Assembly: GCA_002811645.1 (NCBI GenBank)
Contig: PDIP01000045.1
Coordinates: forward strand, 91,801 to 155,800
DNA: 64,000 nucleotides
DNA from: Corallochytrium limacisporum Hawaii
Lineage: Eukaryota; Protista; Pluriformea
Reading direction: 5' to 3'
Shown here: piece by piece, positions 5,684 to 38,920 of the stretch
Layout of the letters: every line of letters starts with the position of its first letter
Position numbering within the stretch: the first letter of the stretch is position 1
The notes under the pieces: model-generated
What the model was told of the DNA's origin: nothing
Databases searched by the model: none
What the model saw: only the letters and a program-made list of their open reading frames with translations
Position numbers and translations under genes: made by a program

Positions 5684-8600
5684 CTACGGAACGGGGAAGT
5701 CGTCGGTAGGCAATGAACGGTAGTCATTGTCAGGGACCACGTCTTCGTGCAAAGTATCCATTTCATTCTCATCGCCAAGAGTACCGCTCTTGTCGGCGGC
5801 ATTGTCGTAGTCATCCGGGTCGAGAAGCTTGCTGTTCACATCCGAAACGTTGGCGGTGACCCTAATTCCGCTGTCAGTGGGCTCCATATACTCGTTAGTC
5901 TCTTCTGTTGGGACACCTACACGAGGTGTCTTATACCCACCATCCCTTGCTACATAGTCCAGCAGTTCGCGGCGCGCGAGCATCATGTACTCATGTCGAC
6001 GGCGAGTACTTTCAGTCTGCAAGGTGTCAATCTGGACACCGGCACGCTTCTGCTGCATCACAAGTTGCTGAAGCTGAGACAAAAGTTCTGCGAAAGTAGG
6101 ACGTTCGTCGGGGTCTAGGCGCCAGCACTGGAGCATCAAGTCATGCATGACCGGAGGGCAGCCCTCGGGCTTCGGAAGAGCATAGCCGGAGTCGATGGCA
6201 GCCACTACCTCCTCATTGCGCATGTCTTTGTACGGACGTTCTCCGTAGGAGTACATCTCCCAAAGCAGCACACCGAAACTCCAGACATCGGTCGCAGAGG
6301 AGAAGCGGCGGTATTTGAGCGCCTCAGGGGCTGTCCAACGCACAGGAATCTGTCCACCGCGAGTAATGTACTGGTCATCCTCCATCACGCGGCTCAGGCC
6401 AAAGTCTGCAACCTTGCAGATGTAACCTTCACCAACAAGAATGTTGCGGGCGGCCAAATCACGATGTACGAATGACTGGGATTCTAGGTAGCTCATGCCC
6501 TGGGCAATTTCCAGAGCCATGCACATCAACCGACTCACGCTTAGGTTTGCTGAATCGGTCTTCAGTACGTCACTCAGTGATCCTTTTTCCAACAGCTCTG
6601 TCACAATCATCTGCGGTTCTACCAATGTGGAAACACCGAAGAGCTGCACTATGTTCGGATGGCTGAACCGTTTCATCAGTTCTGCTTCCTCGAAGAAAGC
6701 AATTCGTTTTTCGTCGTCAGAATCTTGTTGCAACGTCTTGATGGCGACTGGAAGAGGTTCGTCACCATAGCCGAAGCCCATCCAGCGACCTTGCCAGACA
6801 TCACCAAAAGCTCCACTGCCGAGATGCTCATCAATCGTGATGCGATCACGTGGCAGTTCCCACTCTGGATCAATCACATGGCCAAGAGAGCCGTGCTGGT
6901 GCTTACCCACCGCAGACTGACGCATAGGAGAAGTTCCTTTAGGGGACATCGCCGCTAGTGCTTCTGGGGTGGTGTAGCTAGGGCCATGGAGTGGATGGTC
7001 ATAGTCACCAGGGTCACTGAGACCCTTCTGAACTGGAATGGGCTTGAATGACCCCATGCTGTGGTTCGACGACATTGGTGACCCATTGCTGTTGCGAGTG
7101 GCCGAGCCAGTGCGGCGCATGCGGCTAGACTGCGCCGCAGCAAGCGCTCCTGCGGCACCAAGAACAATACCAGAACGCAAGTATGGCTGACTGCGACTGC
7201 CGGCCTGGTGCCTGGCACGGGCCATCTTTCCACCATTAAATGTTCTGGAATGGCTCACAAAGACATCTTCCCTGGCCTCGGTATCTAAGTCTCCGAACGG
7301 TACGTCGTAAGCATTCGCACTGCCATTCATGGGTTTTTCACCCGGCGAGGGCATCGACAATTGACTATAGTTGCTGTTGTCCGAAGCCACCGTTCTGAGG
7401 GTGGCATGGCGATCACCAGTACGGCCATGCTCCAGAGAGTCATCCCCTTCGCCTGGGATGGCAATGGCGACGCCTCCATTAGCACTCTCTCCGCTGGTCC
7501 GGCCATTGGAGGGCGTGTCGTTTGTGTCGCTCTCATCCTTGACACTGCGGCGGCGCCTACGGTAAACCGCATAGACAATTCCACCAAGAACAAGCAGAGC
7601 TACTAGTGCGATGGTAACCGCAAACCACGTTTGATCAGTGACATTCGAGCTACCTCCATCGCTAGGGGAAACCTCTCCCCTACGCTCTAGGCAAACGTTG
7701 TCCGAAACTGGTACATTATAATCGCACGCCTTACATTGCGGTCCCGTATAAGAAGTCTGACACTGGCATTGGCCATTGGTCACATCGCAAATGGAATCTA
7801 CAGTTGACTCCAATTGACAATCACAGGCGACGCATAGAATTGACTCACCTGTTCCGCGATTCCAGAAACCCTTCTGGCACTGGTCGCAATTGTCGCCTGT
7901 GTATCCCTCCGCGCAAATTTGGCACTTATCGCCACTGAACTGCGTCTCACATTTACACTTACCTGACGAGTCACAAATGTCGCTTAAAGCCCGGTCTTCT
8001 ATACAATCACACGCACTGCAGGTTTGTGCATCAGCTCCCGATGGGAAGTAGCCATCGGCGCAATCGGCACAATTTGTACCCGTAAACATCTCTTGACACG
8101 TGTCACAGCGCCGTCCTGTGAACTGGAACATACATGTACAGTCTCCAGTCTCCTTGTCGCAAATAGTGCTAGTGCTACCCGTTGCGTCGCAGTTACAAGC
8201 CACGCAGACCTTTTCCCCTATAACAGTGTCTTGTGCGGCCCAATATCCGTCCGCACATTGATCGCATGAATCTCCTGTATAAGCATCAAGGCAGGAGCAT
8301 ACAACTCCAGCTCCATCAGGGTTCTCCCTTGTTGCGCACCCGTCTGCAGGAACGCACGGCTCATTCGCACCACCAGCCGCCCGTGTTCCGGTTGGATTGC
8401 ATGTTGTCAATAACCGGCACCCAGTTATCACGTCCGCACCTTGCTGTGGAACCGCACACTCACAGTACGTATCATCCGGGCAGTCTGCGACACAAAGCGG
8501 TTCTGAATCTGGATAGTTTATCCGACAACCATCTTCGTCCTCTTGGAAGCATTGGAAATAATCGCCGCATGTGACGTTTGCGAAAAATTCCCAGGGAGCA

Positions 8601-8779
8601 GTCGGGCCTCCCTCACGGGCCTGAGCTTCGCATGCGTTTTCGTCATTAACATCGGCGCAAAATGTCGTCGTCGTTGTTTCGCTAGTTGTTTGATAACAGC
8701 AAGCTGTTGCACCCGATACGCTTGCTGTCAAAGCAAGCAGACCGAAGACCAAAATGAGGATAAGTTTTATGTTCCCCAT
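5684..8779 (-). CDS. Receptor tyrosine kinase with laminin-type EGF ectodomain and Eph-like kinase domain (1031 aa from first ATG)
   Basis: First ATG at 8779 (agcATGg) begins a signal peptide (IKLILILVFGLLALTASVSG). Cys-rich LE repeats follow (e.g. CNCDATGSTSTICDKETGDCTCMFQFTGRRCDTC), then a TM helix WFAVTIALVALLVLGGIVYAVY and RRRRR. Kinase motifs: LGSGAFG, VAIK, HRDLAARN, DFG, PVRWTAPE, DVWSFG. Confidence 0.95.
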   Translation of the reverse strand: MGNIKLILILVFGLLALTASVSGATACCYQTTSETTTTTFCADVNDENACEAQAREGGPTAPWEFFANVTCGDYFQCFQEDEDGCRINYPDSEPLCVADCPDDTYCECAVPQQGADVITGCRLLTTCNPTGTRAAGGANEPCVPADGCATRENPDGAGVVCSCLDAYTGDSCDQCADGYWAAQDTVIGEKVCVACNCDATGSTSTICDKETGDCTCMFQFTGRRCDTCQEMFTGTNCADCADGYFPSGADAQTCSACDCIEDRALSDICDSSGKCKCETQFSGDKCQICAEGYTGDNCDQCQKGFWNRGTGESILCVACDCQLESTVDSICDVTNGQCQCQTSYTGPQCKACDYNVPVSDNVCLERRGEVSPSDGGSSNVTDQTWFAVTIALVALLVLGGIVYAVYRRRRRSVKDESDTNDTPSNGRTSGESANGGVAIAIPGEGDDSLEHGRTGDRHATLRTVASDNSNYSQLSMPSPGEKPMNGSANAYDVPFGDLDTEAREDVFVSHSRTFNGGKMARARHQAGSRSQPYLRSGIVLGAAGALAAAQSSRMRRTGSATRNSNGSPMSSNHSMGSFKPIPVQKGLSDPGDYDHPLHGPSYTTPEALAAMSPKGTSPMRQSAVGKHQHGSLGHVIDPEWELPRDRITIDEHLGSGAFGDVWQGRWMGFGYGDEPLPVAIKTLQQDSDDEKRIAFFEEAELMKRFSHPNIVQLFGVSTLVEPQMIVTELLEKGSLSDVLKTDSANLSVSRLMCMALEIAQGMSYLESQSFVHRDLAARNILVGEGYICKVADFGLSRVMEDDQYITRGGQIPVRWTAPEALKYRRFSSATDVWSFGVLLWEMYSYGERPYKDMRNEEVVAAIDSGYALPKPEGCPPVMHDLMLQCWRLDPDERPTFAELLSQLQQLVMQQKRAGVQIDTLQTESTRRRHEYMMLARRELLDYVARDGGYKTPRVGVPTEETNEYMEPTDSGIRVTANVSDVNSKLLDPDDYDNAADKSGTLGDENEMDTLHEDVVPDNDYRSLPTDDFPVP

Positions 8780-10240
8780 GCTGAGTCTTTGCGTATTTTC
8801 CGATATATGCGGGTTCACCACATTCTTGAAAGCATCTATACCATGACTTATTCAAATCAGTTTCTGATCACTTGGCTTTCCCGTGTTGCGTTCTGTCCCT
8901 AAATATTCTTTAGCCGTAGAATTTCCGAATGTATGTTATTTCTGGATATGGGTTATATGCGACGAAGTAATGAACACCCTCAAAAGTATATGTCGCCAAT
9001 AATAGTATTTGATTGTAAGTTAACGGGAAAAGTAATGATCTATCTAGAGTGAATTGTCAAGTACTTGTTCTCATGTAGGTTCATATTGACAGGGATTTCG
9101 ACCTTTCATGTGGCTTATGATCTATCATTCAATACATATAATTCTAGAACAAGTGAATACATTGAAACTATTCTTCTAACAATCTTCCAATCTACATAAT
9201 GTTGGAGACACTCGGGCATTCCATACGGTCATGAACTCTAGACATAAGAAATATAAACAGCGTGCGTACCCAAAAACTGTTCTCAAAAGAAGGGAAAAGG
9301 GCCTTACAAAGGGGACCAGCCCCCAAGAGATCACAGTATCTCTGGCCAGTTTCAAACAGACGCAAACTGTACCGATCGGCTGCCAAATCCCATATAGTAT
9401 GTACTGAAGTGCGTCCCCTCCCAGTTCCCTCCTTGGTGATTCATTTCTCCTTGCAGTCTATGTCAGAACGTTCCTTTTTCTGAAGCGAATTGCAGAGCAA
9501 ATTTTTCTTGAAGAGATAGCTGTAAATCATTGCTATATCCATTCATTAGGTACTCAATGGATTGGGCAAAAAAAACACCGGGAGAGGGAGGAGGTAGAGA
9601 GGGTTTGGAAACAGACGACGCTAGGGACGTGACGTTCGCCCTCTGCTCGGTTTCTTTCGTGTTCCTCGCCTCCCTTTCTGCGGTTCGCAGTCCCTCTGGT
9701 CTGCTTTCGTGCCATAGTGAGCTGCTGTGTGGAGCATCCGAAACATATTGCGAGACAATCTGGAACAAGGCAGGTATAGGGGAAGAGTGCCAGTCCCTGT
9801 ATGCGTGTCGTGTGGAGAGGGTGATGATCCTGGGACCAACCCGCTTGTGCTTAATCTACATTTCTCAAGAAGCAAAAATAAACCTATGTATCCACTATGC
9901 ACAAGCCATTAAGGATATTTGGAAAGGCCCGGCGGATAGAGAAATTATCGGGAACTATACGCGATGGGGAGACTCAGCAGCCGAAGGGGGGGGGGAAGGG
10001 AGACGGGCAGCGGGGAGGGATGCAACGGAAAGACAAGTCAGGCGACCAGAAGAACTAGCAGGGACAGCTTCGCAGGTCCTTCCTCCCGTTTGGAAGAAGC
10101 CAATGCTTGACCGGACTGGTCTCCAAAGCTCTATATATTGGGTACTGAAAAGTCACTAGCCGTTGTGGGAGAGGTGTTTCGAATGTGTTTCTGTGTGGGC
10201 GCGCAAAAACGTGCCTCAGTGAGCCGCGGGGGGGGGGGGG

Positions 10241-23347: not shown

Positions 23348-24598
23348 TTATGCCATGTAAATCTGGGCAACGCCGACAAAGGCACCGAGGACGCCACCGA
23401 TGAGAATGAGCTTCCATTCGTCCTGCTCGAAGACGGGGTGCAAGACGCGCTCGTAGCGTTCTGGCGGTAGATCGGCCAGAGCTTTGTGAATGGTAGGCTG
23501 CAGTGCAAGTGCCTTGTCGGCATAATCTTTGATGAGGGGGATACCATTGGGTAAATCCGCGATGACAAGATCCATCATTTCCTTCTTAGATTTCTCGTAT
23601 TCTTCGTCACCAATGGTACGGCGCATTATGTCGTTGGCTGGCAGAGCATCCATGGTCTTTCCCAGCTCCCGGAAAATCAGCTTGTGCAAACGATCTCTAT
23701 GAGGACCCAGGGTGATCGCCTTCAACATTCGCTCAGCGGTCATAACCTCCTCGCACACAACAAGCGAGTACTGATATGAGACTTCGGGCTGCCGCTTGAT
23801 GAACAGGCCCTGAAGCGGGTATCCACAGATGTTCCTGGGGTGGATGGGCAGGAAAATAACCTTCAGTGCAATATAGTTGGTGAGGTAGCCTATCGCAAAA
23901 CCAGTAATCGGGAACCACCAGTACTTGGCATCCGGATAGTCAGCCAAAAAGGACAAGACAACCAGATAGAAGACAGTAAATACAATGCCGAGAGCACCGC
24001 CAACCCAGAACCCGGACCGCTCCAAGAACCGCAGTTCCTTGTAGCCGAGCCGCTCGAACATATCAACAAGCAGACCGGGCTTGGCGCTGAAAATTTCGAC
24101 AACCATGTCTCGCAGATCGTAGAAGCTAAGAGGATCGTTGCGGATCTCGTCCATGACTTTCTGGATCAAATCAGGGACATCTTGGCGCAAGTCCTCAAAA
24201 ATATTCTGCTTGTCTTTTTCGTTCAGCGCCGCCCAAACCGCAGGCAGACGCTTGGAAATGACCTCATCCATGGCCTTCTTCAAAAGGTAGTCTCCACGGG
24301 GAGCCAGATGGACCGCAACTTGTTCAGCATCCAATCGTTGGATAATGTCCTTGGGGTTAATGAGCTCCAACATAGTGTCGGTAGCAATATTGGCCATGAA
24401 GACTGCCTTGTAGGGAACAATGCCCTGCCATCCGAACCCGCAGTTATCGAAAGGTGCTACACCGAAGGGTTTCCCGATGCCAAAGAACTTAATAGGGTAG
24501 AAGCAAAGACGGATACCGACGACATTGGTAAGGTAGCCGACAATACCAGATATCAATGGCAGACATATATATGAGATTACGGTCACAGCGTCAACCAT
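23348..24598 (-). CDS. DUF445-like membrane protein with internal duplication (416 aa from ATG 24598)
   Basis: GYLTN...F.PI...GWQGIVP, a second GYLTN...FLPI...LQGLFIKRQ, and C-terminal VFEQDEWKLILIGGVLGAFVG. The upstream in-frame extension runs through CA/GT microsatellites and is not credible as coding. Confidence 0.8.
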   Translation of the reverse strand: MVDAVTVISYICLPLISGIVGYLTNVVGIRLCFYPIKFFGIGKPFGVAPFDNCGFGWQGIVPYKAVFMANIATDTMLELINPKDIIQRLDAEQVAVHLAPRGDYLLKKAMDEVISKRLPAVWAALNEKDKQNIFEDLRQDVPDLIQKVMDEIRNDPLSFYDLRDMVVEIFSAKPGLLVDMFERLGYKELRFLERSGFWVGGALGIVFTVFYLVVLSFLADYPDAKYWWFPITGFAIGYLTNYIALKVIFLPIHPRNICGYPLQGLFIKRQPEVSYQYSLVVCEEVMTAERMLKAITLGPHRDRLHKLIFRELGKTMDALPANDIMRRTIGDEEYEKSKKEMMDLVIADLPNGIPLIKDYADKALALQPTIHKALADLPPERYERVLHPVFEQDEWKLILIGGVLGAFVGVAQIYMA

Positions 24599-26874: not shown

Positions 26875-29800
26875 TCAGTTCTTGCTGCGCAGACGAGAAG
26901 AGCGGCGGACAGGAGCTGCCTCGGCATCGTCTTTCACAGTGGCGGCCTTCTTGGGAGCAGAGGCTTTTTTGGGAGCGGCACGCTTTTTGGCGGTGGGCTT
27001 CTCTTCCTCCTTGACGTCTTCCTTCTCGGCGACCATCTTGCTGGCGGACCGCTTCTTGCCTACAGTCGAGGTCTTTTTGGCAGTGGTGCGCGTGGTTTTG
27101 CTCGTCTTGGCGGATTTCTTGGCCTCGTCTTCCTCGTCAATCTCAGTGACAGTCTCAAAAGTCTTCTTTTCGACAGTTTCGGAGAAACTGACGTGTTTGG
27201 TGTTGCTGGTCTCCTTCTTTGTGGTAGCACCACGGGAACGGGTGGTGCGTTTGGTCAAAGGCTTCTTCTCTTCGGCCACAGACTCGTGAATGGCTTCGAC
27301 CGCTTTGGCGGCTGCACGGCGAGTGGTACGCCGCTTACGCTTCTCCTCAACCTCGGGTTCCTCGTCCTCATCAAGTGTCACTGCCTTGGCACGCTTACGA
27401 GAAGCACGCTTGGGCTTGTCCTCTTCTTCCGGCTCCTGCTGGAGCAGCTCAGCGATAGCCAAGGCAGCAGCAGCATCAGCTACGTTCTCCTCAGGTTGCT
27501 CCTGCTTCTCCACTTGGAGCTGCAGGTTGGCCAAGACCTCTTCGGTTGCGGCCTGCACTACCTCATCGGGAACTGTACGCAGTTTGAACCGTCCAGACTG
27601 AATCTCGTCGCGGACAGGAGTGGACAAACTCTTCTTGTAGACCTTGTTGAGCGTTTTACCCTCCTTGATAGATTTGCGGGTGGGAGTGTCGAGACTCGCC
27701 CTCATGACCTTCGTCAGCTTCTTGCCCTCCTTGATGGATACACGGCACGGAGTGTTCAGGCTCTTCTTCAAAACCTTGTTGAGCTCGCAACCATTTGCAA
27801 TTTGTTCCTTGAGAGGGGTTTGCATCTTTTGAATGGTCTCCTCCGCCTTTGGCTCCTCGGCCTCGACCTCTTCCTTCAGATCTACCATAGCAGGCACCGA
27901 CTTGAGAGCCAACTTTTTCTCCTTAATCTCTTCACGGATTGGAGTCGACAAACTCTTCTTGTAAACCTTGGTCAGACTCTTCCCTTCCTTGATGGAGTCA
28001 CGGGTAGGCGTATCCAGACTCTTCTTCAAAACAGCGGTCAGCTGCTTACCCTCCTTGATAGACTCACGGCAGGGTGTGTTGAGGCTCTTCTTCATAACAG
28101 CGGTCAGCTGCTTACCCTCCTTGATAGACTTACGGCAAGGTGTGTTAAGGCTCTTCTTCATGACGGCCGTCAACTTCTTGCCGGCACGAATGGACTCACG
28201 AGCAGGTGTGTTGAGGCTCTTCTTGAGCACAGGATTCAATTTCACCTCCTGGTCCTCGATGGCCTGTTTCAATGGAGTAGCAATCTTCTTGGTTTCCTGC
28301 TCTCCTTCGGCAGTAGGCTCTTCGTCCACCTCAGGCAGCTGGCGTACAGAGCGGAGCTTGCGGCGAGGCTCCTCGCTGCGCAACTCCTCGCGGATGGGTG
28401 TACTGAGGCTCTTCTTCATTGTAGGCTTCAATTCCTTACCAGCCTTGATGGCGTTCCGAGTGGGAGTATCCAAGCTCTTCTTCATGACCGTCGTCAACTT
28501 CTTGCCAGTTTTGATTGATTCGCGAGTGGGAGTGTCCAAACTCCTTTTCATGACTTTAGTAAGCTTCTTACCTTGCTTGATGGAGTCGCGGCAAGGAGTG
28601 TCTAGGCTCTTTTTCATCACAGGCTGCAATTCTTTGCCGCCGGCCTGAATGGCGTCACGAGTGGGAGTATCCAATGCCTTCTTCATAACCTTGGTAAGTT
28701 GTCTGCCCTCCTTAATGGATTCGCGACAAGGCGTGTTAAGGCTCTTTTTCATCACTGGTTTCAGTTGCTTCTTGGTGGTAGATGCCTCCAGTTGCTGGCG
28801 CATCGGAGAAGCCAAGCGAGCGCTGCGGCGGACGGGCGATTGATTGGGCGAATCCACATCCATTGGCTCAGGATTCTGAGGACTCACGGTTTGGTTCACG
28901 GCGTCGACACAAATTTCCTCCGTGGGTTCTGCCATTTGCTCTTTCTCAGCTTCTTCAGTGTCATGCTGAGGTTCCACATCCTCCTCATCAAGAGCTTGCA
29001 TTACCAGGCGCTTCTCCTTAGCGGCACGAATCTGTTTCTTCAGGGGGGTTGTGAGCACACGGCGGTACAAACTGGTCTCTTCGCGTTCACTGCGAATAGA
29101 CGCACGCTCTAAAAGGTCGTCGTCCATGATGTCGTTGGTGATGTCCTCAATTTTGCCCTTGGAACCGCTCTTCGGGGTCGCCAATTTTTTCTTCAGAGAC
29201 GCAGGCATCACGGCAGAGTATACAGGTGCTGGGGAAGAGGGCTCCATACTTTCAGTGCTCTTCTTCAGAGCAAAATTGCCACCGTTGATTTCCTTACGGG
29301 CAGGTGTGGGGAGCGCCTTCTTGTACTGGCTGCGCAGTCTCACATTCTTGGCCTCGATGTCCCTTTTCAATGGGCTGTTCAGAGCCCGGCGAACAACTTT
29401 CTTAATGTCAGCGCCCTTCACAGTAGGGCTGTGGACCTTGCCATCCTCTTCCATGAAGCTAGCAGCAAGTTCCTTTTCAAGCCTGCGCTGGCGCGTCCGG
29501 CTCATCATAGTCCCAGTGCGCTCGATATCCTGGCGCATTGGCGTAGGCATACGGCGGCGACTAGGGCTCAGGATACTCTGGCCTGTGCTGGAACGTCCCG
29601 GTGCCTTCAGTCCACGCTTTGTGGGGGAGTCAGGAGGCATGTTCTTGTCAAACTCCTGAGGAGCGAGTTTGTCCTGAGGGTACCAAGTGACCGACTTGGA
29701 AGGTGAGGAGGGAGCAGCGGTGTCGTCGTCATCGCCGAAGTCAATGAGATCACCCTGCACTTCCTCAACAATGGCCTCATGGACAATTTGCTTAACTTCC

Positions 29801-30540
29801 TCAACCTTGGTGGTCACAGGAGTGGTAGGCTTGGATTTCTTGTTGGCACTGGCCCTGCGACTGGAGCGACCACTTGGACTGGGCAGAGGGTCGTCCGGCG
29901 TACGCATGCCGTCATTCATAAGATCAAAATCACCTCCATCATTCACGTCAACCAGGTCTTCGTCACCTTCCTTGCGTCCAAAGTTCGCCAAACTCGCAAA
30001 GTCAGGGCTGTTGGATGCCGTGTGCTGTCCTAAGGGCTTGCGCTGCTTTGGGGTACCTGCACGGGCGGGTGACTTCGTAACAGCAGGACTGGCGCCAGCA
30101 TTTTCTTCATTGCCTCCGTTAAGTACTGCGTATAGCTCAATTAGCAGCGGACGGTCACCAATCGTGACAACATCCTCATGCTTTAGCATTACCTTGTCCA
30201 CAATCGGACGCTCGTTCACATATGTCTTGGCCGAGCTATCAAGAGGTTCCAGGAACAGGGCCTTCTTACCACTGTCGGTACGGTCAACGTAGAATTGACA
30301 GTGGAAAGGCTGGACATCACCCTTCTTGACCTGCACAGAGCAATCTTCGGAGCTACCGCAGGTGGTTGGTTCATGGAGCTTGGACAAAATGTCCAGGCAA
30401 ACGGCAGTGCGCTTCTTGGACTTCTTCTTCAGACCAGTCAGCTTTGCAAAGGGCTGCAGCGCAGCCCTCGCAGGGGTTGTGGACCTTGAGCGCCGCTTAG
30501 GCGAACTCAATGGACTGCCAAGAAAGCTCAACACGTTCAT
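26875..30540 (-). CDS. Ki-67-like protein: FHA domain, Ki-67/RepoMan-type PP1-binding motif, tandem 22-aa TPx(R/K) repeats, basic C-terminal tail (1221 aa)
   Basis: First ATG at 30540 (aaacATG). The FHA ends VMLKHEDVVTIGDRPLLIE (human Ki-67 VRLKHGDVITIIDRSFRYE). KSVTWYPQDKLAPQEFDKNMPPDSPTKRG aligns with Ki-67 RRVSFGGHLRPELFDENLPPNTPLKRG. A repeat array and a K/A/T-rich tail follow. Confidence 0.85.
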   Translation of the reverse strand: MNVLSFLGSPLSSPKRRSRSTTPARAALQPFAKLTGLKKKSKKRTAVCLDILSKLHEPTTCGSSEDCSVQVKKGDVQPFHCQFYVDRTDSGKKALFLEPLDSSAKTYVNERPIVDKVMLKHEDVVTIGDRPLLIELYAVLNGGNEENAGASPAVTKSPARAGTPKQRKPLGQHTASNSPDFASLANFGRKEGDEDLVDVNDGGDFDLMNDGMRTPDDPLPSPSGRSSRRASANKKSKPTTPVTTKVEEVKQIVHEAIVEEVQGDLIDFGDDDDTAAPSSPSKSVTWYPQDKLAPQEFDKNMPPDSPTKRGLKAPGRSSTGQSILSPSRRRMPTPMRQDIERTGTMMSRTRQRRLEKELAASFMEEDGKVHSPTVKGADIKKVVRRALNSPLKRDIEAKNVRLRSQYKKALPTPARKEINGGNFALKKSTESMEPSSPAPVYSAVMPASLKKKLATPKSGSKGKIEDITNDIMDDDLLERASIRSEREETSLYRRVLTTPLKKQIRAAKEKRLVMQALDEEDVEPQHDTEEAEKEQMAEPTEEICVDAVNQTVSPQNPEPMDVDSPNQSPVRRSARLASPMRQQLEASTTKKQLKPVMKKSLNTPCRESIKEGRQLTKVMKKALDTPTRDAIQAGGKELQPVMKKSLDTPCRDSIKQGKKLTKVMKRSLDTPTRESIKTGKKLTTVMKKSLDTPTRNAIKAGKELKPTMKKSLSTPIREELRSEEPRRKLRSVRQLPEVDEEPTAEGEQETKKIATPLKQAIEDQEVKLNPVLKKSLNTPARESIRAGKKLTAVMKKSLNTPCRKSIKEGKQLTAVMKKSLNTPCRESIKEGKQLTAVLKKSLDTPTRDSIKEGKSLTKVYKKSLSTPIREEIKEKKLALKSVPAMVDLKEEVEAEEPKAEETIQKMQTPLKEQIANGCELNKVLKKSLNTPCRVSIKEGKKLTKVMRASLDTPTRKSIKEGKTLNKVYKKSLSTPVRDEIQSGRFKLRTVPDEVVQAATEEVLANLQLQVEKQEQPEENVADAAAALAIAELLQQEPEEEDKPKRASRKRAKAVTLDEDEEPEVEEKRKRRTTRRAAAKAVEAIHESVAEEKKPLTKRTTRSRGATTKKETSNTKHVSFSETVEKKTFETVTEIDEEDEAKKSAKTSKTTRTTAKKTSTVGKKRSASKMVAEKEDVKEEEKPTAKKRAAPKKASAPKKAATVKDDAEAAPVRRSSRLRSKN
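27571..28749 (-). repeat. Coding tandem repeat, ~66-bp (22-aa) unit, 16 copies in three blocks
   Basis: Unit KKSL(N/D/S)TP(C/T/I)R(E/D/K)SIKEGK(K/Q)LT(K/A)V(M/L/Y). Two near-identical 66-nt copies lie at about 28021-28152. Confidence 0.95.
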
Positions 30541-31502: not shown

Positions 31503-34500
31503 TTACACTGACTGGTCAACACCACGTTGGGGCATGGGCATGTTCTGAACACGCACATTGTCCATATTGTCCGCGTTGATGCCACGAATGTCCTGGGGAG
31601 TGATGATAATAAATTGACGATGATCGCGACGTTCGGCAGCACGGACCAGGATGTTGAGGGCCTTAATGCGGTTGATAGTGTCCATAAAGACATCAAATTC
31701 GTCGAGGATATGGAAGGGAGTTTCCTGCGTAGACCAGAGAGACACAACGAATGACACAGTGGCCATACTCTTCTCACCGCCCGACAGCTGACTCACTTCG
31801 CGGAATGCATTGTCTTGGCCGTTCTGCATGAGAATCTTGATGGTCCTCTCCGCGGCATTGATTCGCAATTTCGCCACGTAGTTAGCCTGGGATGCAGACT
31901 GCTGGAAGAGCTGATCAATGCGGTCTCGCGCAACATTTGCAATCGAATGAAATTTCTGTTTCCGCTTTTCATACATGTCCGGAAGAACTCCGTGAAGATT
32001 GCGCAGCTTTGTGTAGATTGAGTTCATATCCTCGTATTCATGTTTCATGGTGTCGTAGGTCTGCAAGATGTCATTGATCTCGTCAGCAGATGGTGCATGC
32101 TCTAGGTCATCGACGATGTTCTGGATGTCTGTCCTCACCATGTCGGGATCACGAACGGTTGAGGGTTCCTCCCCAGGATCCTTAAACTCTCTATGCAGCT
32201 TCTCTGTCGCTTGTTCAGCCTTTTGAGTTGCCCGCTCCAACTTTTTCCGGTGTTCGTCCAAAACACTACCGATCTCGTCTACTTTCTTGAGCTCCGCAGC
32301 ATGTTCGGTCTTCTTTGCCTTGATCCGATTCTTTAGATCTGTCATACGTTCATGGATACTTTGCCGCTGATCACTGATATCCGGTGCAGAGTTCACCGTC
32401 TGTTGAACCCTTTGAGTAGCCTCTTCCGTTTTTCTTCGAGCTTCTCTGAGATGCACCCTAGCTTCGTCGATTCGAGAGTGCAGATTCTCTAAACGGCGTT
32501 GGGCAACACGGAGGTTTTCTTCTTCTTCGGCGTTCGCACTATCAATTCCTGTCATGAGGAAGTCTTGAAGCTGCTGTACCTCCGCGCTAAGATCACGTCG
32601 TCTTTTCTGTTCCTCATCGTACTTACGGTCTAATTCAACCATCTCACCCTCGGCCTGTTCTTTTTGAGATCGGCTGGATTGTGTGATCCTCTCCTGTTCT
32701 TTGACATTCTCCTCGGCCTGTGCAACCTCTCCCTGCAGCTCCTCGAGACTACCTGCCCCAGTGCCTGCCCAGCAAGCAGGCAATGATCCGGAATGCTGAT
32801 AGGACATGTACTGAGCGGCCTGAACCTGATCACCTGTGTGCAAGAAAGCAATTAGTCTTTTGGACCTGTGCCGATCAACAAACTCTTGAGCAGCCGTGCG
32901 TTCCGGAATGGCAAAAGCACTGGCAAGGGGGGTGTTGTCGATGAAGACAGTCAAAATCAATCGCTTCTCAAATACGTCACACTTAAAGTCAAGCAGATCG
33001 AGCATGGGCTTATATCCCTGGACACGTGTGATCTTTGATGAAGGGTCCTTAACAGATTCAAACGGTCGGGAAAGAACTCTCGGGCGTTCTGAGGGATCAA
33101 GCTTCAGTTTCTTAAAGATCTGATCCAAAACCTTGGCGTCCTTGCTCGAGTTGACGATGTAGTGCGAAGGAAGGACAGGGTGCGCGTGGTGAAAAGCCTT
33201 GGCATATTCTGGCTCTTGGATCTCGAAATGGCGCCCGATGGGACCGACAGGCGAGCGACTGAAAGCGTTCTTCTGTCTGTCTATCTCCGCAAGAATTTTT
33301 TCAGTGTGCTGGCCAAACCTGAGCAAGGTGTTCCTTTGTGACTGCTTGCGAACCTTCAGGTCCTTCACCAACGTTTCCTTTAACGCGCGCAACTCCCTGA
33401 GCTTATCGTTCGCATCCCGGAAGGAATCTGAGTATGCTCTTGCCTTTTCTTCACAGCGTTGTCGGTCCAATTCCAGTTGATTGACAATATCTTCGACACT
33501 GGCTAGTTGTGTGCGAACGTCTCGAAGATTCTCTTCCGCTGTAGCACGCTGCTGGTTACCACTATTCTGTGCGATACTCTGTTGACGGGACTCAACCTCT
33601 CGGAGCACAATATCGTGATTATGTTGAAGATCATTCAAGGTCTCTTCTTCTTGCTGCTTCTTCCTGGCGGCAAGCCTCGCCTCCTGCTTAACCTGCCGAA
33701 GCTCTTGCTGGTGCTGCTCTTCTTGTTCAGCAAGGTATTGAGCCTGCTGCCTTTCTGAATTCATCTGGTCTTCGAACTCACTGATCTCAGCCACCAAACG
33801 ATTGACCTCCTCATTGGCATTCATCTGTTCATTCTCTCCCTTCTCTTGTCGGCTTCGTAGCTCACGACATCTCTTCACATACTTCATCAACTCAGACCAC
33901 GCGAGCTCTAATTGAAGATCACCCAGTCGGGTCCTATTCCGAGCGACAGACTCAATCTTCTCAACCTTCCTCTCTTCTTCCCTTACTAGTTCCCGCATAT
34001 TCTGCAATCGCCCATCACGATCTTGAAGCTTCGCCTCTAGGCGTTGTGTACATGCGTCGATATTTGTGAGTTTCTCCATTAACAAGTCCAGTAGAGAGGC
34101 AGACCCAAAGAGATCGTACATGCCACGTTCACCTGCATTAGCCAAGAAATCCCTTGCCTTCTCTTGTGTGAGAACGGCAGCTGGGTTATCAACCATAATA
34201 TTGAAGTGGTCAAGGATCTCGTTCAGGTCCCTCTTCGACTTTGACACAATCGGGAATCGCGGCGCGGAATTGTTTTCAGGACGTTTCTCATCAATTTTTC
34301 GTTCGTATTTCATTATTTTGAATCCTCCCTGCCCATCTGCAGAAATATCTCTCTGCACAACAATAGCATCGCCATATTCATGGTATTTGTATGGATTGCC
34401 ATTACCATCATTGTCAATCACAATCTGAACCACAGCTCGACGACAACCATGTTTGACCAGATTTCGAATAGACTCTGCACGGGCCGTTTCCTTCGCACGC

Positions 34501-34829
34501 GCCCCGAAACAAATTTGTAACGCGGTCACAATCGCACTCTTACCGCTGCCGTTGGGGCCCAAGACGAAAGTGATCTTCTTCCCGAACTCCATGGTAAAAT
34601 GTGAGTGGCACATGAAGTTCCAGACCTCAATGCGCCACAGCTTCCCGGAATGCTTCTCAGAATCTTGCTTCTGAGTTAGTGAGCCCGTTTGTGTCTGTGA
34701 TAGTCCTTCGTTCTCAATCCTTGCCTTTTTCTTCCCGCGTGACCGCGAGGAAGACTGTGTCACCTCTTCTATGCTATGGGCCACCATCTTCCCTTGGTCA
34801 CTGATGACCCCCTGCCCACTTCTTTGCAT
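31503..34829 (-). CDS. SMC6: Structural maintenance of chromosomes protein 6 (1108 aa)
   Basis: NFMCH, Walker A GPNGSGKSAIVTAL, coiled coil-hinge (PVGPIG)-coiled coil, signature LSGGEKS, and the SMC6-type Walker B/D-loop PFHILDEFDVFMD. Confidence 0.93.
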   Translation of the reverse strand: MQRSGQGVISDQGKMVAHSIEEVTQSSSRSRGKKKARIENEGLSQTQTGSLTQKQDSEKHSGKLWRIEVWNFMCHSHFTMEFGKKITFVLGPNGSGKSAIVTALQICFGARAKETARAESIRNLVKHGCRRAVVQIVIDNDGNGNPYKYHEYGDAIVVQRDISADGQGGFKIMKYERKIDEKRPENNSAPRFPIVSKSKRDLNEILDHFNIMVDNPAAVLTQEKARDFLANAGERGMYDLFGSASLLDLLMEKLTNIDACTQRLEAKLQDRDGRLQNMRELVREEERKVEKIESVARNRTRLGDLQLELAWSELMKYVKRCRELRSRQEKGENEQMNANEEVNRLVAEISEFEDQMNSERQQAQYLAEQEEQHQQELRQVKQEARLAARKKQQEEETLNDLQHNHDIVLREVESRQQSIAQNSGNQQRATAEENLRDVRTQLASVEDIVNQLELDRQRCEEKARAYSDSFRDANDKLRELRALKETLVKDLKVRKQSQRNTLLRFGQHTEKILAEIDRQKNAFSRSPVGPIGRHFEIQEPEYAKAFHHAHPVLPSHYIVNSSKDAKVLDQIFKKLKLDPSERPRVLSRPFESVKDPSSKITRVQGYKPMLDLLDFKCDVFEKRLILTVFIDNTPLASAFAIPERTAAQEFVDRHRSKRLIAFLHTGDQVQAAQYMSYQHSGSLPACWAGTGAGSLEELQGEVAQAEENVKEQERITQSSRSQKEQAEGEMVELDRKYDEEQKRRRDLSAEVQQLQDFLMTGIDSANAEEEENLRVAQRRLENLHSRIDEARVHLREARRKTEEATQRVQQTVNSAPDISDQRQSIHERMTDLKNRIKAKKTEHAAELKKVDEIGSVLDEHRKKLERATQKAEQATEKLHREFKDPGEEPSTVRDPDMVRTDIQNIVDDLEHAPSADEINDILQTYDTMKHEYEDMNSIYTKLRNLHGVLPDMYEKRKQKFHSIANVARDRIDQLFQQSASQANYVAKLRINAAERTIKILMQNGQDNAFREVSQLSGGEKSMATVSFVVSLWSTQETPFHILDEFDVFMDTINRIKALNILVRAAERRDHRQFIIITPQDIRGINADNMDNVRVQNMPMPQRGVDQSV

Positions 34830-37906: not shown

Positions 37907-38920
37907 ATGCCGGGGGACCGTGTAGAGATTCTAAACAGCCGCTGGGAGGTGCACAGTGCGCGAATTGGTTCTGGCGTTTACGGTACCGTTCTGCATGGTA
38001 TGGATCAGAGAACTGGTCAACCTGTTGCTGTGAAAAGGCTCCGTTGCAGCGAATGGAGTGACCAGCCAGGATCTCAAACACAAGTGTGTGGTATTCCACA
38101 ATTGGTTGTTCGTGAAATCGCTCTGCTGAAGCGACTTCGTCACCACAACCTGGTATCACTACTGGATGTGGTATATAGTGCCAATGGTAGCGTGACGTCC
38201 GCAGACTCCAGCGTTTCCCTCGTCTTTGAATACGCTGAAGAGGATCTGTCTGGATTTCTCAAGCGAACTGGGAACCCAGGAGTTCCACTGAATACCATTA
38301 GAAAATTTGCATACCAACTCTTCGATGCGCTAAGGTACTGTCACATGTGCAGCATCGTTCACAGAGACGTGAAACCTGCCAATATTCTGGTGTCTCAAGG
38401 AAATAATATCAAGTTGGCAGACTTTGGTATGGCTGCTGCTAGCAACGCCGGCCGTGTTATGACTCCTGGGCTTGTCACACTCTTCTACAGGGCCCCTGAA
38501 GTTCTGATCGGTAAGAACTATGACAACTGTGTGGACGTATGGGCGGCTGCGGCCGTTATCGCCGAGCTGGCCATCGGTGATCCGTTCTTTAAGATGCCAG
38601 GTCAACACAGTGAACAGCAGCAACTGATTGCCATATATCTCATGCTTGGGCCCCCGAACCAGTCGTTCTTCCGTGCGTTCAACATCACCTTCCACAATAT
38701 GCAGTCGAGATACACTCCGCAACAACAGGCTGTGCTCGCCGGCAACCGTATTGCTGTCTGTGACCGATTGGGCGGTGAGGGCTGGGACCTCTTGGCATCC
38801 ATCTTCCGATGGAATCCCGACGAGCGTTTGACTGCGGCAACTGCGCTAGCACATCCTTTCTTAAGGCTTGACCAACATGTAAGTCGACGCTCTTCGGACA
38901 GCGGTAATTATGACATGTAG
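37907..38920 (+). CDS. Cyclin-dependent kinase, CDK4/6-like (337 aa)
   Basis: IGSGVYGTV, VAVK, cyclin helix GIPQLVVREIALLKRL, SLVFEY, PGVPLNTI, HRDVKPANIL, DFG, T-loop MTPGLVTLFYRAPEVL. Confidence 0.85.
   Translation: MPGDRVEILNSRWEVHSARIGSGVYGTVLHGMDQRTGQPVAVKRLRCSEWSDQPGSQTQVCGIPQLVVREIALLKRLRHHNLVSLLDVVYSANGSVTSADSSVSLVFEYAEEDLSGFLKRTGNPGVPLNTIRKFAYQLFDALRYCHMCSIVHRDVKPANILVSQGNNIKLADFGMAAASNAGRVMTPGLVTLFYRAPEVLIGKNYDNCVDVWAAAAVIAELAIGDPFFKMPGQHSEQQQLIAIYLMLGPPNQSFFRAFNITFHNMQSRYTPQQQAVLAGNRIAVCDRLGGEGWDLLASIFRWNPDERLTAATALAHPFLRLDQHVSRRSSDSGNYDM

What the first reader, a model, noticed from the sequence alone, without database searches (positions are those of the whole stretch)
27571..28749. 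Sixteen tandem repeats, each coupling a full CDK site to a WH2-like motif: candidate cell-cycle-switched actin-binding array
Seen: 16 units of about 22 aa. Every unit has T-P-x-(R/K) (TPCR, TPTR, TPIR, TPLK, TPAR, TPVR). In most units this is followed by I-x-x-G-x(2,3)-L-x-x-V, e.g. SIKEGKKLTKV, EIQSGRFKLRTV, AIQAGGKELQPV. About five more degenerate copies lie upstream (e.g. NSPLKRDIEAKNVRLRSQ, PTPARKEINGGNFALKKS). Established: S/T-P-x-K/R is the optimal CDK site. WH2 motifs end in a helix, I-x-x-G and an LKKV-like segment (WIP DISKGKKLKKT), and tandem WH2 arrays nucleate or sequester actin. The unit does not resemble the vertebrate FKELF Ki-67 motif. Inference: CDK phosphorylation and a PP1 recruited in cis could toggle a multivalent actin-binding or charge-brush array on a chromatin-tethered protein. 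I know of no described system like this. Caveat: the usual WH2 LL positions are here (C/T/I/L/V/A)-(R/K), so the WH2 match is partial.
Basis: partly seen in the sequence, partly recalled or inferred. Interest (0 to 1): 0.85.

Follow-up and report, generated by a model that had tools for sequence, protein, structure and literature searches.

The report
Ancient CDK-gated WH2-like Ki-67 repeat
This single-celled relative of animals has a version of the cell-division protein Ki-67 carrying 16 copies of an old repeat, also found in sponge, jellyfish and protist Ki-67 but not in the vertebrate ones tested, that joins a cell-cycle phosphorylation site to a motif resembling known actin binders; actin binding itself is untested.

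Summary
In detail: 16 units of about 22 aa, all with T-P-x-R/K, in an intronless 1221-aa ORF (30540-26875, minus). The protein is a Ki-67-family member (FHA, RVxW plus KiR-SLiM PP1 site, basic disordered body). The repeat is not a local oddity. The same 21-24-aa unit occurs in Ki-67-type proteins of sponges, cnidarians, choanoflagellates and Plasmodiophora, between the PP1 site and the Ki-67 motifs, where vertebrates have the charged patch; six vertebrate Ki-67s lack it. Units are under purifying selection (dN/dS 0.09). The WH2 likeness is more than chance: repeat profiles retrieve mainly WH2 peptides from the PDB, and this genome's own WH2 scores like a repeat unit (permutation P 2e-4). Units that lost the CDK site keep the hydrophobic, I, G, L-K/R-x-T core. 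Against: the second leucine of WH2's LL is R/Q, the helix is short, this genome's units fall below the Pfam WH2 cut-off and are degenerate, and binding was not tested. Best reading: a CDK1/PP1-switched basic brush whose units are also specific binding motifs, actin being the likeliest partner (about 45%). A 2026 preprint reports non-vertebrate Ki-67 but not this repeat. The scan had noted this gene only on this same DNA.

The parts
26875..30540 (-). Ki-67-family gene, 1221 aa, intronless, single copy, pI 9.7
   Evidence: ORF; contigs of two runs cover it without joints for introns; one locus in the genome; profile with relatives retrieves vertebrate Ki-67 at E 1e-15 to 1e-21
30136..30366 (-). 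FHA domain, Ki-67 type but lacking the phospho-Thr-binding Arg (GR to GS) and Ser (SxxH to QxxH)
   Evidence: Pfam FHA E 2.3e-11; best PDB match Ki-67 FHA, E 0.004; alignment with relatives that keep R and S
29599..29697 (-). PP1 docking site: RVxF variant KSVTW followed by KiR-SLiM-like FDxxMPPDSPTKRG, with CDK sites at aa 279 and 305
   Evidence: Pfam PP1_bind weak, E 0.033; match to Ki-67 peptide of PP1 complex 5J28; 11/19 identical to fish Ki-67; motif definition PMC5005033
28753..29562 (-). Five looser upstream copies of the repeat (aa 333, 389, 412, 492-514, 578), dispersed
   Evidence: repeat HMM scores 11-22 bits for four of them; own-genome search; for aa 578
28336..28752 (-). Repeat block 1, six units (aa 597-735); site of the extra unit in the second strain
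27886..28296 (-). Repeat block 2, six units (aa 749-885)
   Evidence: AlphaFold2 model of five units: 7-residue helices on an extended string, pTM 0.17
27571..27837 (-). Repeat block 3, four units (aa 902-990)
26878..27561 (-). C-terminal tail: acidic stretch, then basic T/R/K-rich region ending in RRSSRL; inferred chromatin tether like the Ki-67 LR domain; second RVxF (KHVSF, 27184-27198)
   Evidence: sequence and charge; no Pfam match; tether role is inference; choanoflagellate-type relatives carry SAP DNA-binding domains here instead

Best explanation
A Ki-67 orthologue of a unicellular holozoan that keeps an ancient repeat array. Each unit is L/M-x-T-P-h-R/K-x-E/A-I-x-x-G-x-x-L-K/R-x-T: a threonine CDK site capping a short amphipathic helix, followed by a WH2-type extended segment. 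Shown: architecture, conservation, selection, WH2-like sequence. Inferred from known pathways: the basic tail holds the protein on chromatin; in mitosis cyclin B-CDK1-Cks1 phosphorylates the threonines processively (95% Thr, 21-24 aa apart) and also blocks the PP1 site; 16 phosphates cancel most of the array's +44 charge; at exit PP1 docked in cis strips them and the array turns on. [quoted passage not shown]
For: Family membership. Repeat in 40+ relatives at 50% clustering, named ones Hydra, Sanderia, Corticium, Oscarella, Ephydatia, Barroeca, Mylnosiga, Plasmodiophora. Sequence-specific selection: dN/dS 0.09 among ten units, with L, T, P, R, I, G, L invariant over several codons. Profile of CDK-type units: all 4 PDB hits are WH2; profile of TP-less units: N-WASP, MIM, WIP, WASP, INF2, WAVE1. 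Genome's own WIP-like WH2 scores 16.9 bits on a matrix made only from repeat units, background maximum 5.2 of 9556 windows, column-permutation P 2e-4. 65 in-register units without a CDK site keep hydrophobic -4 (97%), G (65%), K/R (71%), T/V (69%). Some relatives hold canonical LL units in register and one passes the Pfam WH2 whole-protein cut-off. Two helix hydrophobics four apart suffice in a shorter WH2-like helix (PMC10907219); ciboulot has a Lys at the equivalent -3 position pairing with E167 (numbering from PMC3464195). Only pThr docks Cks1 (PMC4230602); Cks1 and an actin with intact cleft are in the genome.
Against: No binding test or complex model could be run. Position -3 is R/K (or Q when the CDK site is lost; L only 8%), whereas every canonical WH2 seen here has L there. 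Predicted helix is 7 residues. No unit of this gene matches Pfam WH2 near its cut-off; position -4 is C/T/A in 11 of 16 and L-K/R holds in 4 of 16. About a quarter of family units have P instead of G-x. Single-unit PDB E-values are only 0.02-1, and profile-profile probability against three genomic WH2s was 3%. The first half also resembles the UBM ubiquitin-binding helix. The array's position and charge are enough to explain a role without actin.
Confidence: 0.45

Rival explanations
1. Charge brush only: the array is the ancestral form of the vertebrate Ki-67 charged patch. CDK1 phosphorylation neutralises it in early mitosis; dephosphorylation exposes basic charge, and RNA-dependent condensation clusters chromosomes. 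I, G and L only set spacing or kinase/phosphatase docking, and the WH2 likeness is convergence of a helix-Gly cap.
For: Array lies between KiR-SLiM and the CD/Ki-67 motifs in ten relatives, net +39 to +80; vertebrates have +17 to +103 there with no repeats. [quoted passage not shown] Vertebrates do without the repeat.
Against: A charge function does not need invariant I, G, L at fixed spacing from sponges to Rhizaria, kept even in units without a CDK site, nor does it predict the order-specific WH2 match.
Confidence: 0.28
2. A CDK-gated binding motif for a partner other than conventional actin: microtubules or a spindle protein, an actin-related protein, a phosphatase such as PP2A-B55, or ubiquitin (UBM-like first half).
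For: Three units occur in an ASPM-like IQ-repeat fragment (P0039), which points to the spindle. L-P-x-x-h-Q/R-x-E-I matches the Pol iota UBM at E 0.009. Conserved polar -3 and acidic/small -1 suggest a surface not identical to WH2.
Against: UBM needs a preceding hydrophobic, acidic helix; here that stretch is K-rich (own knowledge). No other PDB or Pfam family matches the second half; WH2 is the only family hit by several units.
Confidence: 0.22
3. Neutral repeat expansion in a disordered linker, without specific function.
For: Copy number differs between two strains and ranges from about 4 to 37 across relatives.
Against: dN/dS 0.09 among units; same consensus in lineages separated by the deepest eukaryotic splits sampled.
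Confidence: 0.05

Closest known systems
Ki-67 / Repo-Man family (FHA PF00498 + PP1_bind PF15276), including non-vertebrate Ki-67-like proteins of bioRxiv 10.64898/2026.06.18.733134
   Same: N-terminal FHA, RVxF plus KiR-SLiM, long basic disordered body with repeats and many CDK sites, basic tail.
   Different: Repeat is a 22-aa TPxR-I-G-L unit, not the 122-aa K167R/FKELF unit; no Ki-67 motif or CD motif in this copy; FHA has lost R and S. The preprint states the disordered part has no sequence conservation, and has no mention of WH2, actin or this organism.
Vertebrate Ki-67 charged patch (human 496-681; bioRxiv 10.1101/2023.11.23.568026)
   Same: Same place in the protein, strongly basic, phospho-switched.
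   Different: The patch works by charge and has no such repeat; this array has a conserved hydrophobic pattern.
WH2 motif (PF02205; WASP, WIP, MIM, INF2) and multi-repeat beta-thymosins (ciboulot); tandem WH2 nucleators Spire, Cobl, VopL (own knowledge)
   Same: Hydrophobic at -4, I at 0, G at +3, L at +6, K/R at +7, T/V at +9, identical spacing; helix then extended chain; tandem copies.
   Different: L at -3 replaced by R/K/Q; T-P caps the helix and makes a CDK site inside the motif; period 21-24 aa is tighter than in known tandem WH2 nucleators (own knowledge); nuclear or chromosomal host protein.
UBM ubiquitin-binding motif (Pol iota, PDB 2KWV)
   Same: L-P-x-x-hydrophobic-Q-x-E-I helix start.
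   Different: First UBM helix absent; units are basic rather than acidic.

Membership tests
Ki-67 family | N-terminal FHA of Ki-67 type | tested here: met
   Pfam FHA 2.3e-11; Ki-67 FHA is best PDB hit though narrowly ahead of Dun1; best of two genomic matches to the family FHA profile (profile includes the query)
Ki-67 family | FHA phospho-Thr-binding residues (G-R, S-x-x-H) | tested here: not met
   R and S replaced in this copy, kept in sponge, choanoflagellate, jellyfish and Plasmodiophora relatives
Ki-67 family | RVxF followed by KiR-SLiM FDxxLP(P/A)N(T/S)PL(R/K)(R/K)Gx(T/S)P | tested here: met
   KSVTW then FDKNMPPDSPTKRG; divergent, below Pfam cut-off; relatives with the same repeat score far over cut-off
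Ki-67 family | Large, basic, disordered, repeat-containing, CDK-site rich | tested here: met
   pI 9.7, net +66, 40 S/T-P of which 28 full sites; no tertiary fold for the array
Ki-67 family | Vertebrate Ki-67 motif (D-L-x-G-h-x-x-L-F-x-T-P) and CD motif | tested here: not met
   absent in this copy; present downstream of the same array in sponge and other relatives
Ki-67 family | Localisation to the mitotic chromosome periphery; PP1 binding | not testable with these tools
   needs imaging and binding assays
WH2 motif | Pfam WH2 score over the curated cut-off (23.1 bits) | tested here: not met
   no unit of this gene; best block 9.8 bits; true genomic WH2s 27-48 bits; relative P0038 31.3 bits summed, best single unit 21.1
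WH2 motif | Two helix hydrophobics four residues apart | tested here: inconclusive
   met in the family (94-97% at -4, I at 0); in this gene -4 is I/L/V in 5 and C/T/A in 11 of 16
WH2 motif | LL pair (hydrophobic at -3) | tested here: not met
   R/K in CDK units, Q 52% and L 8% in TP-less units; ciboulot domain 1 is a precedent for K here
WH2 motif | G then LKKT/V-like segment six residues after the I | tested here: met
   I-to-L distance 6 in 414 of 452 units; family L-[RK]-x-[TV]; this gene mostly L-T/N-K/A-V
WH2 motif | Binds G-actin in the subdomain 1/3 cleft | not testable with these tools
   structure tool folds single chains only
UBM ubiquitin-binding motif | Helix-L-P-helix with hydrophobic, acidic first helix | tested here: not met
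   only the second helix matches; preceding positions are K/R/T

The most novel reading that the evidence does not exclude
Ancestral eukaryotic Ki-67 is a chromosome-tethered, multivalent WH2-type actin binder with a CDK site built into each unit and its own PP1 dock, so that actin is gathered or nucleated on chromosome surfaces only at mitotic exit; vertebrates kept the charge and lost the motif.
Probability: 0.38. Interest if true: 0.9.

Novelty: new variant of a known kind. Interest (0 to 1): 0.7.

Why it matters
Ki-67's disordered body is held to be conserved in charge pattern, not in sequence, and its repeats have no known partner. A sequence-conserved repeat shared by sponges, cnidarians, choanoflagellates, this holozoan and a rhizarian gives a new marker for finding Ki-67 outside vertebrates, suggests what the vertebrate charged patch replaced, and hands over short peptides for a one-week binding test. 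If the partner is actin, it would be a WH2 variant with a built-in CDK switch and a direct link between the mitotic chromosome coat and actin, bearing on how actin assembles around chromatin at mitotic exit. If not, the conserved motif still calls for an unknown partner.

Tried and rejected
Pfam on the whole protein and on single units: no WH2 over cut-off; ATP-synt_ab_C, TFX_C, YjfB and similar weak hits rejected as summed repeat noise. Folded-solenoid reading rejected: pTM 0.17, no Foldseek match. Assembly artefact rejected. ESM Atlas gave nothing for two arrays. Word-index searches were poor on this low-complexity query, so the taxon list is a lower bound and absence from non-vertebrate bilaterians is not shown. 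Four phmmer hits (P0033, P0034, P0044, P0047) were unrelated repeats and were dropped. The idea that TP-less units revert to LL was tested and not upheld (8 of 52 hydrophobic, P 0.06). Pfam Thymosin, PP1_bind and hNIFK_binding own-genome searches were blank or below cut-off and prove nothing. Paper searches found no link between Ki-67 and WH2 or a CDK1-gated WH2. No contig taken for human was fetched; no spliced model was needed.

Full report
Observation. The stretch lies in an intronless ORF on the minus strand, 30540-26875, 1221 aa. Five looser copies lie upstream. The disordered part has 26 full CDK sites against 2.6 in shuffles. Contigs of two public runs, probably RNA, cover the ORF with no intron joint and stop near its ends; the second strain has one more 66-nt unit and 13 of 15 coding differences are silent. 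The gene is single copy in a 24.1-Mb, 286-contig genome. That size, the lack of introns and a receptor-type tyrosine kinase nearby fit the unicellular holozoan Corallochytrium limacisporum; this name rests on my memory, not on a tool.

The host protein. It has an FHA domain (Pfam E 2.3e-11) whose best solved relative is the Ki-67 FHA, and a second match to the Ki-67 peptide in the PP1 complex 5J28. That stretch reads KSVTW then FDKNMPPDSPTKRG, an RVxF variant plus the KiR-SLiM that PMC5005033 found only in Ki-67 and Repo-Man. A profile of this protein and 14 relatives retrieves bird and fish Ki-67 at E 1e-15 to 1e-21. It is basic (pI 9.7) with a basic tail. I file it as a divergent Ki-67-family member (about 93%). 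It lacks the vertebrate Ki-67 and CD motifs, and its FHA has lost the phospho-Thr-binding Arg and Ser that its relatives keep.

The repeat is ancient. phmmer with the array over 1.84 billion representatives gave 47 hits, 43 with the same 21-24-aa unit. Named ones are Hydra, Sanderia, the sponges Corticium, Oscarella and Ephydatia (the first two sponge proteins named Ki-67-like by NCBI), the choanoflagellates Barroeca and Mylnosiga, and Plasmodiophora brassicae, a rhizarian. Most of those scanned carry FHA and/or PP1_bind far over cut-off; several unicellular-type ones add SAP domains. Consensus: K-x-L/M-x-T-P-L/V/I-R/K-x-E/A-I-x-x-G-x-x-L-R/K-x-T. Copy number runs from about 4 to 37. Six vertebrate Ki-67s have no unit. 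Where the downstream CD or Ki-67 motif is present, the array lies between it and the KiR-SLiM, the place of the vertebrate charged patch that drives RNA-dependent chromosome clustering after dephosphorylation (bioRxiv 10.1101/2023.11.23.568026). Many hits are unnamed metagenome proteins, so I cannot say whether invertebrate bilaterians have it.

The sequence is selected, not just the charge. Among ten regular units of this gene dN/dS is 0.09, and L, T, P, R, I, G and L are invariant over several codons. In relatives, 65 non-redundant in-register units have lost the CDK site yet keep hydrophobic -4 (97%), G (65%), K/R +7 (71%) and T/V +9 (69%), as well as the CDK units do (I and L were the anchors there). 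So the core is a motif in its own right and the CDK site is laid over it. AlphaFold2 models five units as 7-residue helices on an extended string with no packing (pTM 0.17), the shape of short linear motifs.

Is it WH2? For: a profile of 119 units finds four PDB sequences, all WH2 peptides; a profile of TP-less units finds N-WASP, MIM, WIP, WASP, INF2 and WAVE1, over both helix and LKKT parts. WH2 is the only Pfam family hit by several units. A matrix made only from CDK-type units of relatives scores this genome's own WIP-like WH2 at 16.9 bits, as high as most of this gene's units, against a background maximum of 5.2 and a column-permutation P of 2e-4. Canonical LL units sit in register in a few relatives, and P0038 passes the Pfam whole-protein cut-off. 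I also recall that the first repeats of actobindin and worm tetrathymosin have M at -8, L at -4 and a non-hydrophobic -3, like the TP-less units; I could not check this. Against: -3 goes to Q, not L, when freed; no unit of this gene nears the Pfam cut-off; -4 is C/T/A in 11 of 16 and L-K/R holds in 4 of 16; single-unit E-values are weak; hhalign against three genomic WH2s gave 3% (tiny template); and the first half also matches a UBM helix. It fails formal WH2 membership but may work like one.

Mechanism. Shown: parts, order, conservation, selection. From known pathways: CDK1 phosphorylates S/T-P-x-K/R; only pThr docks Cks1 for processive N-to-C runs (PMC4230602), which fits 95% Thr and the fixed spacing; Cks1 is in the genome; CDK1 and Aurora B sites in the PP1 motif block PP1 until exit (PMC5005033), and this copy has CDK sites at aa 279 and 305. 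Sixteen phosphates would cancel most of the array's +44. Inferred: at exit PP1 in cis turns the array on as a basic patch, and each unit becomes free to bind its partner; a phosphate three residues before the Arg would compete with E167 of actin, whose cleft and acidic residues are intact here. Whether bound actin would be nucleated or sequestered cannot be told. I put actin at about 45%, charge alone at 28%, another partner at 22%.

Novelty. Ki-67 outside vertebrates is reported: PMC4032110 aligns animal homologues including Ciona, and bioRxiv 10.64898/2026.06.18.733134 extends it to sponges, insects, fungi and protists. That preprint says the part beyond the FHA has no sequence conservation and never mentions WH2, actin or this organism. 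Searches of the held library found no Ki-67-WH2 link and no CDK1-gated WH2; subscription journals are not covered. The conserved repeat is therefore a new variant within a known family, with a real chance of a new mechanism. Earlier scan notes on this same DNA had flagged the Ki-67 likeness, the block structure and the degenerate FHA; none reported the family-wide conservation.

Limits. No complex model or binding test was possible; the structure tool folds single natural chains, and I did not build a fusion. Unit statistics count sequences, not independent events, and sponges and cnidarians dominate.

Noticed in passing
L006:4-762 (P0039, metagenome contig): Three units of the same repeat sit directly before IQ motifs and an ASPM-like C-terminus (source name: abnormal spindle-like microcephaly-associated protein); the repeat may also occur in a spindle-pole protein. 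The contig cuts off the start.
   Followed up: partly
window 30136-30366: The FHA has lost the Arg and Ser that bind phospho-Thr, unlike all relatives aligned; no clear NIFK FHA-binding segment was found in the genome (below cut-off, not proof).
   Followed up: partly
P0022, P0042, P0011, P0002, P0007, P0046: Choanoflagellate and other Ki-67-type relatives carry 2-4 SAP DNA-binding domains at the C-terminus, a likely alternative chromatin tether to the LR domain.
   Followed up: no
P0062 (Plasmodiophora brassicae): Ki-67-type FHA and nine dispersed units, but no PP1 motif by pattern or Pfam; spacing irregular (36-250 aa).
   Followed up: partly
window 28429-28484: A second strain has one extra 66-nt unit here: live copy-number variation.
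   Followed up: yes
window 27571-28752: Each block opens with a TPLK-type unit and closes with an LSTP(I/V)R unit that has the best L-K/R-x-V tail; the LNKVYKK unit type is shared with a choanoflagellate.
   Followed up: partly
window 31503-34829 and 37907-38920: SMC5/6-type gene and a protein kinase next to the Ki-67 gene; no evidence gathered that the neighbourhood is conserved.
   Followed up: no
window 23348-24598: DUF445-like membrane protein (weak Pfam hit, E 0.016).
   Followed up: no
window 5684-8821: Tyrosine-kinase-type receptor with laminin EGF repeats, consistent with a holozoan.
   Followed up: no
window 26890-26907, 27184-27198, 28813-28830: Two RRSxRL motifs and a second RVxF (KHVSF) in the same protein.
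   Followed up: partly
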